Program-made: the position numbers and the translations under genes
Assembly: GCA_002269645.1 (NCBI GenBank)
Contig: NIVC01000061.1
Span: 62,001-126,000 of the forward strand
DNA from: Macrostomum lignano
Lineage: Eukaryota
Reading direction: 5' to 3'
DNA length: 64,000 bases
Notes under the pieces: generated by a model
Database searches by the model: none
Told to the model about the DNA's origin: nothing
What the model saw: only the letters and a program-made list of their open reading frames with translations
In this document: positions 1 through 17,346 of the stretch, in pieces
Position numbering within the stretch: the stretch's first letter is position 1
Layout: every line of letters starts with the position of its first letter

Positions 1-1350
1 TAATGATCCTAAGGTAAGACGCTGGAGTTTTGAAAGTAATTCAGTGACAAAATATCTGAAAAGACTCAGCTCTCTCAAAATCTATTTAAAGTTTACTAAG
101 TTTGAGCTTTGATGGCAAATTTAATGCCAGTTTTAAGGAGCCTCGAGCCCATTCCACTGACCCTTGACTACGCACACGGATACGCAGCCAAGTACACTCT
201 CACAGGGTGGCCAGTGGCCCTTACTTTCACATCGTCAGGTAGTGTAAAGAATCTGTGAATTGCAGAGCTTGGTCCTCATGGGGGAAAATTCCCAGACAAA
301 GGGCCTGTCAACTTAAGCTCACAAAGTGGAGCCCGAGTAACCTATGTGCACAAATTATGCGTCGTTCTGCTCACAGTGACACTAGGAAGCTATATTTGGC
401 AAAAATGCGACAAAAATTGGACTTGGGATAGGGAAGAATAACCAAGGGGATGATTAGTGACTTATATTAACTTAAGCTTATAAAGTCCCTAATTATGTCC
501 TTGCTTGTTCTCCCCGAACCCAAGTCAAATTTTTGTCGCATTTTTGCCAAACCCAGCTTCCTGGTGTCACTGTGAGCAGAACAACGCATCATTTTTGTGG
601 TTACCCGGGCTCCACTTTATGAGCTTAAGTTGACAGGCTGTTTTTGTGCTCAAATCCTAAACTAATTTGGCTGCGCCTGGACGGCTTCTCTGCCCCTTCT
701 AAGTCGCTAGGGAATGTGGTGAAAAATGATTGTTAAGTGATTCTCGGTTTTAGAGTTCTGCTTCTTTAAAATTGACGACCTCCTTTCTTACGAGATATGT
801 TTTCCAAGCAGCGCCACACAAGTTAAAGCCTGGATATAATGTTTTAAGCCCATCTTAGATGTGCTTTCATGATTCACTATTTTTGCTTATCATTTAGGTC
901 GGGCCGCTGACAGTCAGCACGAAGGCGGGATCAATAGTATCAGCAGTGAGACGCCTGAGGGCTCGAGGCGGCGGCGACTGTCCAGAGTTAGCGATGCGCG
1001 GCATTCTGGCCGCAGCCAGAAAGGTTAAGCGCGGCTCCGTGATCTACGTGTTTACCGACGCCAGCGCTAAAGATTACAGGTTGCAGAAAAAGGTAAAATG
1101 ATTTTGCAATGGTGCATGTCTTTAGGAAAACTATATACGCAAATCTGACAATAAATATTTTTTTTCAACTACACATGTAGGTACGCAGAGTCATCGACAA
1201 CAAGAACCTGCAGATGGTGTTTATTGTCACGGGAAGACTTTGCGGAAGAAATTACCACAAAGAGTACCAGGCTCTTTCCAGAGGCAATGGCCGTGTCATC
1301 ACTTTGAACAGCCGAAAAGTCAACAAGGTGCTGAGCTTCATCCGTCGAGC
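1..1350 (+). other. Hemicentin/VWA7-type vWA domain of gene 1
   Basis: Spliced translation NDPK|VGPLTVSTK...RARGGGDCPELAMRGILAA...GSVIYVFTDASAKDYRLQKK|VRRVIDNKNLQMVFIVTG matches the hemicentin N-terminal vWA signature (HDP..GP, GGGDCPE, IYVFTDA..KDY, VFVLTG). Confidence 0.85.
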
Positions 1351-16300: not shown

Positions 16301-17346
16301 GCTGAAGAGAATTCCAAGTGAGTCGCAAAATCGTTAAAGCGATATGTTTAAGTTCATATTTACAGGGAACTGTGGATATCAAATCTCTTCCCACAGAATG
16401 CGAGGCCGCGGACAAGACCTGTAAAAACCTCCACGCCGACGGTTATTCCTGCCGCATCGGAGACAAGCAGCACTCTAACTGCCTCTGCGTTCAGAACTCA
16501 TCTGGCTGGGGCAAGAATGAAATCGTCAGCGGCGACAAGGCGACTGTGATCACTGGCTCCGGCGGCGCGGTGGTCAGCATGTGCGTTGACATCAGCAGTG
16601 GCAAGAAGTACGAGCAGGGCCAGCAGTGGACGACTTCCTGCTTCACCTACAAGTGCACAGCAACTGGCGGCCAGCTGCTGCAAGCCAAATGCCAACAGAA
16701 GGACGGCAAGTGTCGAAATATCGGCGAGAAGGGTTTTGACTGCATGATCAGCGACAAGGCGAGGGCCAACTGCGAGTGCAGCAAGGACGCTTCCGGCAAC
16801 CCGATGCTTGTGGCAACCTTTGAAGGTGATTTTCCTGTTTTTGCATACTGATCCGCTCAGACTTAAGGGCCCTGTTGAGTATGAAATACTCGCAGCAATA
16901 ATAATCGCAGGAGGGTTGCGGGCAAAACTACGGGTAAAACTACATGTATTACCGTATTGGTGTGCCAGAGTGTACAATCTCATTTTTATAAAATATTATG
17001 CAAAAACCTCACCGATAAATAATATACTTTGTTACCGTCTGTACATATTAGTATAGTCTGATACTAATATACATTGGACGAATTCTTAGATGCTCTCGAC
17101 AACACGTCTTAGAAGCAGTTCGAAATTTCTGTGCATCGTGCATTTTTGTCGAATGTGCAATCTTCATGCCCAAATCCACGCCGCTTAACTTTCTCAGGTC
17201 GGCAAATCACCGAGGTGCACAAGAAGACGGAAGTGAGCACCTCTCTGAAGATGATTGCTAAGAGCGCCAAGAAGACAATCACCAGCGAGACTTCTTCTTC
17301 GTCCAGCTCGTCCAGCTCGTCCAGCTCCTCATCGGGAGCGAAATAA
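1..17346 (+). CDS. Giant Arg/Lys-rich multidomain extracellular (adhesive/cement/mucus-like) protein, 5'-partial, ~3,900 aa in window
   Basis: Hand-spliced exons with GT-AG boundaries and frame continuity: 1-13, 898-1092, 1181-1604, 1866-1997, 2089-2295, 2391-2543, 2632-2727, 2818-3573, 3666-4940, 5211-5648, 5744-5986, 6223-6333, 6427-6528, 6602-6691, 6775-6816, 6924-7019, 7100-7165, 7785-8222, 9151-9252, 9517-9720, 9823-10482, 10560-10658, 10752-10886, 10992-11078, 11186-11449, 11529-15874, 15968-16317, 16397-16825, 17198-17346 (TAA, overlapped by AATAAA). Apparent frame breaks at ~4006-4135, ~12499 and ~12958-12963. Extracellular domains (vWD, EGF, FN2, ShKT) imply secretion; the signal peptide would lie upstream of the window. 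Confidence 0.88.
303..638. mobile_element. Foldback/MITE-like element (near-complete 336-bp imperfect palindrome) in intron 1
   Basis: GCCTGTCAACTTAAGCTCA(C/T)AAAGTGGAGCCCG(A/G)GTAACC at 303 is the reverse complement of 599-638. Complementarity continues for ~165 bp per arm to a centre near 468-479. No ORF and no clear TSD. Confidence 0.7.
1501..5986 (+). other. Ten follistatin-N-like (FOLN-type) 4-Cys motifs with long Arg/Lys-rich inserts
   Basis: Repeated (D/N)-(P/L)-C-x4-C-x2-G-x2-C-[basic insert]-(A/T)-(R/K)-C-V pattern, with minor variants; three more copies at ~11330-12010. Confidence 0.7.
3842..4340 (+). repeat. Coding tandem repeat encoding (RRX)n; 9-nt basic and 36-nt higher-order unit CGAGCGAGACGAAACAGAAGACTAAGACGAACAAAG
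   Basis: Translation RRARRVRRTRRVRRTRRARRNRRLRRTKRARRNRRLRRT...; degenerate and out of frame between ~4006 and 4135. Confidence 0.85.
6223..12540 (+). other. Long array of Arg-rich furin-like (C..G.....G.C...CP.G) cysteine repeats
   Basis: Dozens of CPxG(Y/F)...C.x.CP motifs, e.g. CPAGFAKRNGRCEYTVCSSGSYRYRGTCMKSCPSG. Confidence 0.75.
12544..12642 (+). other. ShKT domain
   Basis: CYDRAYTCKAMARRKRCSSKLVSYLCPVSCGKC has the 6-Cys ShK spacing with the C-terminal CPxSCGxC. Confidence 0.8.
12661..13700 (+). other. vWD-C8-TIL cassette
   Basis: [27 protein letters not shown]...KVQGICGNCNGNPSDDL (vWD); YCGMIIDKSGPFGSC...CRFDVC...CQSLESLYNAC (C8); CGPNAVYSQKASGCPRTC...CVCKPGFVLNGRACVPEKSC (TIL). Confidence 0.9.
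13710..15610 (+). other. vWA - five calcium-binding EGF - vWA
   Basis: IDVAFVIEGT (vWA with degenerate MIDAS); five D(I/V)(N/D)EC...C.N..(G/P)(S/G)(F/Y).C.C repeats; VDFFFLIDVSD (second vWA). Confidence 0.88.
16074..16187 (+). other. Fibronectin type II domain
   Basis: CVFPFKYRNKWHYSCDQYEGKYWCSFNRNHKTGSWGYC matches the FN2 consensus (C.FPF.Y...C...WC...WGYC). Confidence 0.85.

What the first reader, a model, noticed from the sequence alone, without database searches (positions are those of the whole stretch)
1..17346. Giant polycationic secreted protein with an unusual domain string: candidate flatworm glue, cement or mucus component
Seen: one spliced gene joining a hemicentin-type vWA, about 2,500 aa of extremely Arg/Lys-rich Cys-stapled sequence, ShKT, vWD-C8-TIL, vWA, 5 cbEGF, vWA, FN2 and an unassigned Cys module. 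Established: vWD-C8-TIL assemblies drive polymerisation in mucins, VWF and zonadhesin. From my recollection, Macrostomum lignano adhesive protein ap1 (Wunderer et al. 2019 PNAS) combines K/R-rich regions with vWD/C8/TIL/vWA/EGF domains. Inference: this is a distinct, intron-rich member of that class (paralog or homolog), possibly for adhesion, egg cement, rhabdite mucus or antimicrobial defence. I do not recognise this exact architecture from any named protein.
Basis: partly seen in the sequence, partly recalled or inferred. Interest (0 to 1): 0.88.

Follow-up and report, generated by a model that had tools for sequence, protein, structure and literature searches.

The report
Giant polycationic secreted flatworm matrix protein
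This is a real, apparently intact and uncharacterised gene of the flatworm Macrostomum lignano. It encodes a protein of about 3,900 residues with a huge positively charged, cysteine-braced half fused to clotting-factor/mucin-type assembly domains. It resembles the worm's known glue protein ap1 in design but is not ap1, and its tissue and function are still unknown.

Summary
Window 898-17346 (+) holds one spliced gene. My model has 32 coding segments and 27 GT-AG introns (median 93 nt), and gives 3,892 aa in the window. The 5' end lies upstream of the window.

Domain order:
- VWA_4 (hemicentin-type, N-part missing)
- a 2,288-aa polycation (37% K+R, 1.7% D+E, 7% Cys, net +818)
- ShKT (borderline), VWD, C8, TIL
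- VWA, 5 cbEGF, VWA
- three copies of a 66-aa 8-Cys module, with FN2 between the first two
- a Ser-run tail

The DNA is Macrostomum lignano. An allelic Mlig_3_7 contig matches at 98.6% and repairs two of the four frameshifts.

It is not Mlig-ap1. The ap1 antibody epitope and four ap1 MS peptides are absent. There is no C-type lectin domain, there are 5 rather than 17 EGFs, and the cationic part is not GRK low complexity. That part has two sections: 13 four-Cys knots bracketing predicted K/R helical hairpins, then furin-like repeats. Neither section has a detectable homologue (0 hits in 1.84 billion representatives).

The best named hit is Theama ap1, but the D assembly is just as close to a mollusc zonadhesin-like protein.

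Most likely it is a secreted, disulfide-multimerising polycation that binds polyanionic glycans. The tissue is unknown. I rate it a new variant of a known kind, of moderate interest.

The parts
1..897 (+). Intron sequence preceding the first in-window exon; the 5' exons (signal peptide and first ~50 positions of VWA_4) lie upstream of the window
   Evidence: No coding signal in three frames and no tblastn match to a VWA_4 protein before 898. Acceptor cattTAG at 892-897.
898..1363 (+). Hemicentin-type von Willebrand A domain (Pfam VWA_4), C-terminal two thirds; exons 898-1092 and 1181-1604
   Evidence: PF25106 E 2.6e-19, profile positions 50-141 of 169. 54% identity over 67 aa to the VWA_4 protein P0057.
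1502..6224 (+). Polycationic region, part 1 (aa 173-1305). It holds ten of the thirteen four-Cys knots (C-x4-C-x5-C ... C); the other three lie in the furin-like part. The third-to-fourth-Cys loop carries K/R-rich inserts of 13-370 aa. Includes a 72-bp (24-aa) coding tandem repeat at 3846-4328.
   Evidence: Gene model and motif list. 43% K+R and net +485. AF2 predicts long helix-turn-helix pairs with pLDDT >90 between the Cys knots. TRF. No Pfam family and no homologue in the word-index search.
6225..12499 (+). Polycationic region, part 2 (aa 1306-2460): arginine-rich furin-like cysteine repeats with 31 CPxG-type motifs and 10.5% Cys, interspersed with three more four-Cys knots
   Evidence: Pfam Furin-like E 2.9e-14, 5 stretches. 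Composition. Exhaustive phmmer with 11531-12502: 0 hits in 1.84e9 proteins.
12544..12642 (+). ShKT-like six-cysteine domain
   Evidence: Pfam ShK E 8e-4, 20.3 bits against a cut-off of 20.9. Spacing C-x6-C-x8-C-x8-C-x3-C-x2-C read from the sequence.
12664..13700 (+). VWD - C8 - TIL assembly (VWD 12664-13130, C8 13311-13529, TIL 13539-13700)
   Evidence: VWD E 5e-31; C8 E 3.3e-15; TIL E 2e-9. 37-42% identity to the D assemblies of Tmed-ap1 and a mollusc zonadhesin-like protein.
13716..14210 (+). von Willebrand A domain 1
   Evidence: Pfam VWA E 7e-23, two stretches.
14304..15020 (+). Five calcium-binding EGF domains
   Evidence: Pfam EGF_CA E 4.9e-33, 5 stretches. Five D-[IV]-[DN]-E-C starts read from the sequence.
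15057..15542 (+). von Willebrand A domain 2
   Evidence: Pfam VWA, VWA_2 and VWA_3 hits at residues 684-824 of the 972-aa ORF.
15675..15872 (+). 8-Cys module copy 1 (VWC/Fn1-like, unassigned)
   Evidence: Aligns with copies 2 and 3 and with the post-TIL segment of Tmed-ap1, which its authors call vWC. No Pfam hit.
16065..16190 (+). Fibronectin type II domain
   Evidence: Pfam fn2 E 4.8e-9. PDB PDC-109 E 1.9e-6; mannose receptor and MMP-2 FN2.
16209..16488 (+). 8-Cys module copy 2, split by the intron 16318-16396
   Evidence: Alignment A1; gene model.
16579..16779 (+). 8-Cys module copy 3
   Evidence: Pfam Fn1_2 E 4e-4, below the cut-off. AF2 beta-rich model with pLDDT 84-87 over the first 40 residues. 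Only weak PDB fold matches to fibronectin Fn1 and to VWF/mucin D-assembly parts, all E > 0.2.
17198..17346 (+). Predicted last exon, with a 16-Ser run and a TAA stop overlapped by an AATAAA signal
   Evidence: Donor gaag|GTGATT at 16826 and acceptor tttctcAG at 17197. Predicted only; the alternative stop is at 16849-16851.

Best explanation
A Macrostomum lignano gene for a giant secreted structural protein that acts as a covalently multimerised polycation.

Shown:
- the exon-intron structure and the domain string;
- the extreme charge: 2,288 aa with net charge about +818 and almost no acidic residues;
- the regular cysteine framework;
- sequence constraint on the coding parts.

Inferred mechanism:
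- The protein enters the secretory pathway.
- The VWD-C8-TIL assembly, together with the many Cys modules, forms intermolecular disulfides, as D assemblies do in VWF, gel-forming mucins and zonadhesin.
- The cationic half has two forms: long K/R helix pairs whose ends are tied by four-Cys knots, followed by stiff furin-like repeats. It binds polyanions electrostatically. Likely partners are sulfated or sialylated glycans of mucus, of the glycocalyx or of a partner glycoprotein.
- Binding condenses the partner in the secretory granule and cross-links it after release. This is the cohesive role proposed for the K/R regions of Mlig-ap1.
- The VWA, cbEGF and FN2 modules add calcium-dependent protein and collagen-type contacts.

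Which gland or matrix uses the protein is unknown. Candidates are the adhesive organ, cement or shell gland, rhabdite or mucus cells, and basement membrane.
For: - Gene reality: Pfam hits from E 1e-9 to 1e-33 in a consistent order on one strand. There are 27 canonical short GT-AG introns.
- Intactness: two of the four frameshifts are repaired in the allelic contig. There are no in-frame stops inside exons.
- Constraint: between the two copies there are 7 synonymous and 4 non-synonymous coding differences, and 0.19% divergence in coding against 0.77% in non-coding DNA.
- Charge and Cys framework.
- Helical hairpins between Cys knots: AF2 pLDDT >90.
- Extracellular character: ShKT, VWD, C8, TIL, EGF_CA, fn2 and Furin-like are all disulfide-rich extracellular modules.
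- Analogy: the best named hit is Theama adhesion protein 1, E 1e-153. In PMC6410801, Mlig-ap1 combines K/R regions with vWD-C8-TIL-EGF, heparin blocks attachment, and cations block release.
Against: - No signal peptide could be examined, because the 5' end is outside the window. Four exact-ORF look-ups failed.
- No transcript or protein evidence was obtained. Twelve predicted tryptic peptides are absent from the stored, truncated parts of the footprint and tail MS tables of PMC6410801.
- PMC8621496 states that double knockdown of ap1 and ap2 removes the adhesive vesicles. This argues against a major role in the adhesive granule itself.
- There is only one D assembly and no CTCK domain, so mucin- or VWF-style end-to-end polymerisation is not established.
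- 76 R-x-[KR]-R motifs would be furin targets in the secretory pathway, unless they are protected.
- The helical-hairpin model comes from single-sequence AF2 (pTM 0.43).
Confidence: 0.6

Rival explanations
1. It is a true paralogue or diverged duplicate of Mlig-ap1, is made in the adhesive gland cells, and is a third, overlooked component of the duo-gland glue.
For: The best named hit is a flatworm ap1. It shares the combination of ShKT, VWD-C8-TIL and cbEGFs with a giant K/R-rich region. The post-TIL module of Tmed-ap1 aligns with this gene's 8-Cys modules. M. lignano is a neopolyploid with many duplicates (PMC10733133, title and abstract).
Against: There is no C-type lectin, only 5 EGFs and no GRK repeats, and the cationic region is on one side only. 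The D assembly is no closer to ap1 than to a mollusc zonadhesin-like protein. No peptides were found in the stored MS tables. Knockdown of ap1 plus ap2 already abolishes the adhesive vesicles (PMC8621496). A direct comparison with MH586844 was not possible.
Confidence: 0.15
2. It is an extracellular-matrix or basement-membrane protein of the hemicentin/fibulin/matrilin kind. It anchors glycosaminoglycans and collagen in tissue and is not a gland secretion.
For: An N-terminal VWA_4 as in hemicentin. Two further VWA domains flank cbEGFs as in matrilins; MATN2 was among the hits. It has a collagen-binding-type FN2. The polycation would bind heparan or chondroitin sulfate.
Against: There are no Ig, TSP1, G2F or fibulin C-terminal modules. 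VWD-C8-TIL with ShKT is typical of secreted gels and adhesives rather than basement membranes. No known ECM protein carries a comparable +818 block, though this last point rests on my own knowledge and on the empty searches.
Confidence: 0.15
3. The cationic half is a polyprotein precursor. Proprotein convertases cut it into many small cationic Cys-stabilised peptides for antimicrobial or defensive mucus, and the C-terminal domains serve as a carrier.
For: There are 76 R-x-[KR]-R motifs in the cationic region against 3 in the C-terminal half. The region contains short disulfide-braced basic modules.
Against: The basic residues are so dense that cleavage would give heterogeneous fragments rather than defined peptides. 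Module sizes range from 13 to 370 aa, so there is no regular peptide unit. The K/R regions of Mlig-ap1 survive secretion and are detected by antibodies in footprints (PMC6410801).
Confidence: 0.07
4. It is a decaying pseudogene or an assembly artefact that joins unrelated pieces.
For: Four frameshift patches are needed in the window. The Mlig_3_7 contig breaks inside the gene.
Against: Two of the frameshifts are absent from the allelic copy, which in turn carries different 1-nt indels, as expected from long-read errors. The other two lie in a tandem repeat. Exons contain no stop codons. Splice sites are canonical and keep the frame across 27 introns. Synonymous changes outnumber non-synonymous ones, and coding divergence is four times lower than non-coding.
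Confidence: 0.03

Closest known systems
[quoted passage not shown] 2019, PMC6410801) and the flatworm ap1 family (Tmed-ap1, Mile-ap1, Mpus/Mtub/Mhtx-ap1)
   Same: Same species as Mlig-ap1. Both are giant secreted-type proteins with thousands of K/R-rich residues joined to a VWD-C8-TIL assembly and cbEGFs. ShKT domains are also present at the N-terminus of Tmed-ap1 and of the JGI ap1-like protein P0003, as read from their sequences. Tmed-ap1 is the best named hit (E 1e-153, 29% identity over 823 aa).
   Different: It lacks the C-type lectin domain that all described ap1 cores carry. It has 5 EGFs rather than 16-19. It adds VWA_4, two VWA, FN2 and three 8-Cys modules. Its cationic region lies on the N-terminal side only. 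That region is Gly-poor (2-8%) and Cys-structured (four-Cys knots with helical inserts, then furin-like repeats), not GRK low complexity. The ap1 epitope SRKPRRKNRKSRKP and four ap1 peptides are absent. D-assembly identity is 37% to Tmed-ap1, no higher than to a mollusc protein.
Zonadhesin / VWF / gel-forming mucin D-assembly proteins (e.g. zonadhesin-like protein of Liolophura sinensis, P0002)
   Same: A VWD-C8-TIL assembly with the GDPHY and GICGNCNG motifs. Identity is 42% over 348 aa, the highest found for any part of the gene.
   Different: It has a single D assembly instead of tandem ones. It has no CTCK, no PTS mucin domain and no MAM domain, and it carries the polycationic half.
Hemicentin-1 (fibulin-6) and other VWA_4 proteins
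   Same: An N-terminal VWA_4 with the GGGDCPE ... FTDAxxKD motif, followed later by cbEGFs.
   Different: There is no Ig array, TSP1, G2F or fibulin-type C-terminus. Only the VWA_4 is shared.
Sea star footprint protein 1 (Sfp1) and similar marine temporary-adhesion cohesive proteins
   Same: Large Cys-rich secreted proteins that combine vWD, C8 and cbEGF. PMC6410801 discusses them as analogues of ap1.
   Different: As described in PMC6410801, Sfp1 has galactose-binding lectin domains; no polycationic block is mentioned there. It was not compared by sequence here.

Membership tests
Flatworm adhesion protein 1 (ap1) | C-type lectin domain immediately N-terminal of the vWD (present in all six Macrostomum ap1 cores and in Tmed-ap1; PMC8621496, PMC9229212) | tested here: not met
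   No Lectin_C hit in any scanned segment of the gene. In my model a ShKT domain directly precedes the VWD. The only Lectin_C in the window belongs to a separate gene on the opposite strand, at 20796-21560. Model aa 417-1305 (the K/R region) were not scanned.
Flatworm adhesion protein 1 (ap1) | vWD - C8 - TIL core | tested here: met
   VWD E 5e-31, C8 E 3.3e-15, TIL E 2e-9.
Flatworm adhesion protein 1 (ap1) | Long fibrillin-like array of calcium-binding EGFs (16-19 in complete ap1 sequences) | tested here: not met
   Only five EGF_CA domains, bracketed by two VWA domains.
Flatworm adhesion protein 1 (ap1) | GRK (Gly-Arg-Lys) low-complexity regions flanking the core on both sides (Macrostomum type) | tested here: not met
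   The cationic region is N-terminal only. It has 2.1% Gly in part 1 and 8.0% in part 2, and 7% Cys in regular motifs. The C-terminus is a Ser run. The ap1 KR epitope is absent. The ap1 sequence itself was not available for alignment.
Flatworm adhesion protein 1 (ap1) | Orthology of the core by sequence | tested here: inconclusive
   Tmed-ap1 is the top named hit. However, D-assembly identity is 37% to Tmed-ap1 and 32% to P0003, against 42% to a mollusc zonadhesin-like protein. Proteins over about 1,700 aa, Mlig-ap1 included, did not appear in the searchable set.
Flatworm adhesion protein 1 (ap1) | Expression in adhesive gland cells, presence in footprints, and a non-adhesive RNAi phenotype | not testable with these tools
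   The only indirect check was that 12 predicted tryptic peptides were not found in the stored, truncated MS tables of PMC6410801.
VWF / gel-forming mucin / zonadhesin D-assembly polymers | VWD-C8-TIL(-E) assembly | tested here: met
VWF / gel-forming mucin / zonadhesin D-assembly polymers | Tandem D assemblies plus a C-terminal cystine knot (CTCK) for end-to-end polymerisation; a PTS mucin domain in mucins | tested here: not met
   There is a single D assembly. No CTCK or mucin-domain hit appeared in Pfam scans of the C-terminal half. The only Ser/Thr-rich feature is a 16-residue Ser run.
Hemicentin | N-terminal VWA_4 domain | tested here: met
   PF25106 E 2.6e-19. The match is partial because the 5' exons are outside the window.
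Hemicentin | Long Ig array, TSP1 repeats, G2F domain and fibulin-type C-terminal module (list from my own knowledge of hemicentin-1) | tested here: not met
   None of these families were hit anywhere in the gene.
Follistatin-N/EGF-like four-Cys hairpin (my own pattern-based label for the C-x4-C-x2-G-x2-C ... C knots) | Match to the Pfam FOLN or EGF models | tested here: not met
   Isolated modules give no FOLN or EGF hit, only noise (TILa E 0.04, CBM_1 E 0.02). The resemblance is one of cysteine spacing only.

The most novel reading that the evidence does not exclude
The cationic half is a new kind of protein polyelectrolyte. It consists of about 60-residue K/R helix pairs stapled at their base by a four-Cys knot, followed by arginine-loaded furin-like rods, all mounted on a disulfide-multimerising D assembly. 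It would be the matrix or condensing agent of a flatworm secretion whose protein basis is still unknown. Candidates are rhabdites (which I recall, without verification, as acidophilic, meaning basic-protein-rich) or the cement that glues eggs. It would work by complex coacervation with acidic glycans. That would make it a third, independent polycationic system beside ap1/ap3.
Probability: 0.25. Interest if true: 0.7.

Novelty: new variant of a known kind. Interest (0 to 1): 0.5.

Why it matters
Flatworm temporary adhesion is one of the few wet-adhesion systems with a genetic model. Its current model rests on two proteins (ap1, ap2) in Macrostomum.

A second giant polycationic protein carrying a VWD assembly in the same genome has two implications:
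- The design 'polycation plus D assembly plus cbEGF' has been built at least twice with unrelated cationic sequences. That points to the charge block as the functional unit.
- It gives a concrete candidate for secretions whose proteins are unknown, such as egg cement, rhabdite mucus or matrix.

The Cys-stapled K/R helical hairpins and arginine-rich furin-like repeats are structured rather than low-complexity. They should therefore be easier to express recombinantly than GRK repeats, which could interest biomimetic-adhesive and coacervate research.

The gene sits in a published genome and is probably present in its automatic transcript annotation. The novelty therefore lies in recognising and characterising it, not in finding new sequence.

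Tried and rejected
- **Recovering the 5' end.** Exact-product look-ups of four window ORFs found nothing. The one matching public contig, NIVC01003115.1, ends inside the gene at the point matching window 10416, so it cannot supply the 5' end.
- **Exhaustive search with the spliced protein.** I used the single exon 11531-12502 instead and got 0 hits.
- **Word-index searches.** The N-terminal 688 aa returned only one VWA_4 protein. The C-terminal 349-aa cassette returned nothing. All hits are under 1,700 aa, so giant proteins such as Mlig-ap1 seem not to be in the searchable set. No direct alignment to ap1 was possible.
- **Identity with Mlig-ap1.** The antibody epitope and four MS peptides taken from PMC6410801 are absent from all six frames, even allowing mismatches. 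Identity is rejected.
- **Expression evidence.** Twelve predicted tryptic peptides are absent from the stored parts of the footprint and tail MS tables. The tables were cut when stored, so this is a weak negative.
- **FOLN/EGF label for the four-Cys knots.** Pfam does not support it, so I keep it only as a spacing resemblance.
- **Fold of the 8-Cys module.** The AF2 model has mean pLDDT 69. Foldseek against the PDB gave only E > 0.2 matches to Fn1 and to VWF/mucin D-assembly parts. Inconclusive.
- **Literature.** Searches combining Macrostomum with hemicentin, zonadhesin, von Willebrand, cement gland, rhabdite and positively charged found no description of this gene.
- **Pseudogene or artefact.** Rejected; see the rival explanations.

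
Full report
**Source of the DNA.** The EF-hand ORF next to the gene (17940-18431, minus strand) is encoded identically on NCBI GCA_002269645.1 contig NIVC01003115.1. NIVC00000000 is the Mlig_3_7 assembly of Macrostomum lignano (PMC5730564). The last 18 kb of that contig (L002) aligns to window 10416-21916 at 98.6%. The contig ends exactly there, inside the gene, so the window is another assembly, allele or homeologue of the same locus. 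Over the 7 kb of gene compared, the two copies differ by 17 single-base indels and 21 substitutions. That pattern is typical of long-read consensus errors plus a little real divergence.

**Is the gene real?** Yes. Stop-free + strand segments rich in K/R and Cys run from about 900 to 17,350. I built a model by dynamic programming. It used codon log-odds trained on the gene itself, GT-AG introns with simple splice scores, and penalised frameshifts. After I fixed the first acceptor by eye, the model has these features:
- 32 coding segments and 27 introns, ranging from 73 to 928 nt with a median of 93 nt, and with GTAAGT/GTGAGT donors and TTTCAG/TTTTAG acceptors;
- 3,892 codons in the window;
- no internal stop codons.

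Four frameshift patches are needed. Those at 12503 and 12957 are repaired by an extra base in L002, whose called product reads ...LYPGGKKIRIYHSG... straight through. L002 carries different indels of its own elsewhere. The patches at 4029 and 4081 lie within a 72-bp (24-aa) tandem repeat at 3846-4328.

Between the two copies, coding differences are 7 synonymous to 4 non-synonymous. Divergence is 0.19% in model exons against 0.77% in model introns and flanks. The numbers are small, but they point toward purifying selection and support the exon map.

Positions 1-897 contain no recognisable coding sequence. The Pfam VWA_4 match starts at profile position 50. The signal peptide and the first part of the first domain must therefore lie upstream of the window. 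The last exon (17198-17346) is a prediction. Its TAA stop is overlapped by an AATAAA signal.

**Architecture.** Window coordinates are given in the parts list.
- VWA_4, E 2.6e-19.
- Polycationic part 1, aa 173-1305.
- Polycationic part 2, aa 1306-2460, which Pfam recognises as Furin-like (E 2.9e-14).
- ShKT, borderline at 20.3 bits against a 20.9 cut-off.
- VWD, E 5e-31; C8, E 3.3e-15; TIL, E 2e-9.
- VWA, five EGF_CA (E 5e-33) and a second VWA.
- A 66-aa 8-Cys module.
- FN2, E 5e-9, which also matches the FN2 domains of PDC-109, the mannose receptor and MMP-2.
- Two more copies of the 8-Cys module.
- A tail with 16 consecutive serines.

**The polycation.** Over 2,288 aa it has 37.4% K+R, 1.7% D+E, 7.0% Cys and a net charge of about +818.

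The gene carries 13 copies of a four-Cys knot, [DN][PL]C-x4-C-x2-G-x2-C ... C; ten lie in part 1 and three in the furin-like part 2. The loop between the third and fourth Cys ranges from 13 to 370 residues and is 40-50% K/R in the long versions. Single-sequence AlphaFold2 of the exon 2820-3572 predicts two helix-turn-helix pairs: 15-75/79-142 and 158-193/200-245. pLDDT is above 90 along most of the helices and low at the Cys knots. I read this as long basic helical hairpins tied at the base by disulfides. It is a prediction only (pTM 0.43).

The knots look like follistatin-N/EGF hairpins by spacing, but Pfam does not support that label.

Part 2 has 10.5% Cys and 31 CPxG-type motifs about 15-40 residues apart.

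Neither part has detectable relatives:
- The word-index search with the first 688 aa found only one VWA_4 protein.
- An exhaustive phmmer search of the 324-aa exon 11531-12502 against 1.84 billion cluster representatives found nothing at E <= 0.001.
- The C-terminal cassette of 8-Cys modules plus FN2 also found nothing.

**Relation to ap1.** PMC6410801 describes Mlig-ap1 as 5,407 aa. It has K/R regions A-C at both ends (more than 3,600 aa), a C-type lectin, vWD-C8-TIL and 17 EGFs. PMC8621496 and PMC9229212 describe the flanks as Gly-Arg-Lys low complexity. They describe the conserved core as C-lectin, vWD, C8, TIL and then 7-19 EGFs.

The window lacks the ap1 antibody epitope SRKPRRKNRKSRKP and four ap1 MS peptides, so this gene is not ap1. 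It also lacks the lectin and has five EGFs. It adds VWA_4, two VWA, FN2 and three 8-Cys modules, and its cationic part is of a different nature.

Theama ap1 is the best named hit for the 972-aa exon (E 1e-153). Restricted to the D assembly, identities are:
- 37% to Tmed-ap1;
- 32% to a second ap1-like protein (P0003);
- 42% to a chiton zonadhesin-like protein.

The two ap1-type proteins share only 33% with each other. The D assembly therefore carries no orthology signal. The GICGNCNG motif is common to all of these proteins.

Two features are shared with ap1-type proteins but not with the mollusc hit. One is a ShKT domain upstream, read from the P0001 and P0003 sequences. The other is the post-TIL module that the Theama authors call vWC, which aligns with the 8-Cys modules here. 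Common ancestry with ap1 is thus plausible but unproven. I could not align to Mlig-ap1 itself. All hits are shorter than 1,700 aa, which suggests that very long proteins are not in the searchable set.

**Function.** Every recognisable module is a disulfide-rich extracellular one, so a secreted protein is by far the most likely reading. The signal peptide remains unseen.

D assemblies mediate disulfide-linked multimerisation in VWF, gel-forming mucins and zonadhesin. This is established knowledge, not tested here.

A block of about +800 with almost no acidic residues must be neutralised by polyanions. In PMC6410801, heparin blocks attachment and free cations block release. The authors assign the K/R regions of ap1 a cohesive role through binding to negatively charged glycans.

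My best explanation is therefore a covalently multimerised polycation that condenses and cross-links acidic glycoconjugates of a secretion or matrix. VWA, cbEGF and FN2 would add calcium-dependent protein and collagen-type contacts.

Where it acts is open. Two observations argue against a major role in the adhesive granule:
- ap1 plus ap2 knockdown removes the adhesive vesicles (PMC8621496).
- None of 12 predicted tryptic peptides occurs in the stored parts of the footprint and tail MS tables. This is weak evidence because the files are truncated.

The rivals are an ap1 paralogue in the glue, a hemicentin- or matrilin-like matrix protein, a convertase-processed peptide precursor (76 R-x-[KR]-R motifs), and a pseudogene. 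They are weighed in their own section.

**The 8-Cys module.** Copy 3 gives a sub-threshold Fn1_2 match (E 4e-4). An AF2 model is beta-rich and confident over its first 40 residues. Foldseek against the PDB lists fibronectin Fn1 fragments and VWF, MUC5AC, MUC5B and MUC2 D-assembly parts first, all at E > 0.2. I call it VWC/Fn1-like but unassigned.

**Novelty and interest.** Five full-text searches found no description of this gene. It lies in a published genome, and one public copy is cut by a contig end inside the gene, which may have hidden it. It is best filed as a new variant of a known kind, namely marine-invertebrate cohesive or adhesive proteins that join a D assembly and cbEGFs to a charged block. 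What sets it apart is a structurally distinct, orphan polycationic half. Without expression data the functional claim stays inferential, so I rate the interest as moderate.

Noticed in passing
window 10416 (= end of NIVC01003115.1; L002 position 18014): The public Mlig_3_7 contig carrying the 3' half of this gene stops inside the furin-like region. In that assembly this copy of the gene is truncated at a contig end.
   Followed up: partly
window 10416-17500 vs L002: The two copies differ by 17 one-base indels but only 21 substitutions. Each copy breaks different reading frames, so gene calls on either assembly alone are fragmented. For example, the public contig has a 349-aa VWD-C8-TIL call.
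   Followed up: yes
window 3846-4328: A 72-bp tandem repeat (6.8 copies) lies inside the coding sequence and encodes RRARRNRRLRRTK-type 24-aa units. Another frame of the same repeat reads ETKQKTKTNKAS. Two frameshift patches fall here, so the true copy number and frame are uncertain.
   Followed up: partly
window 20796-21560 (-): A single-exon ORF of 254 aa with a hydrophobic N-terminus and a C-type lectin domain (Lectin_C E 2.4e-6). It lies 3.5 kb downstream of the gene on the opposite strand. [quoted passage not shown]
window 17940-18431 (-): A single-exon EF-hand protein gene (163 aa) lies 600 nt downstream, tail to tail with the giant gene. It was the handle that identified the organism.
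   Followed up: yes
window 30730-64000: About 20 different minisatellite arrays (periods 20-69 nt, up to 99 copies; e.g. 41785-44530 and 57341-59315) fill the introns of a P4-ATPase (flippase) gene and of a Ser/Thr kinase / HEAT-repeat gene. They produce the extreme GC and AT skews of the composition profile. The giant gene's introns have none.
   Followed up: partly
window 28001-30000: An AT-rich block (GC 0.25) between the lectin gene and the ATPase gene. Not examined.
   Followed up: no
window 7166-7784 and 8223-9150: Two introns are much longer (619 and 928 nt) than the gene's median of 93 nt. They may hide missed exons or inserted elements. No Cys- or K/R-rich open segment was seen in them.
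   Followed up: partly
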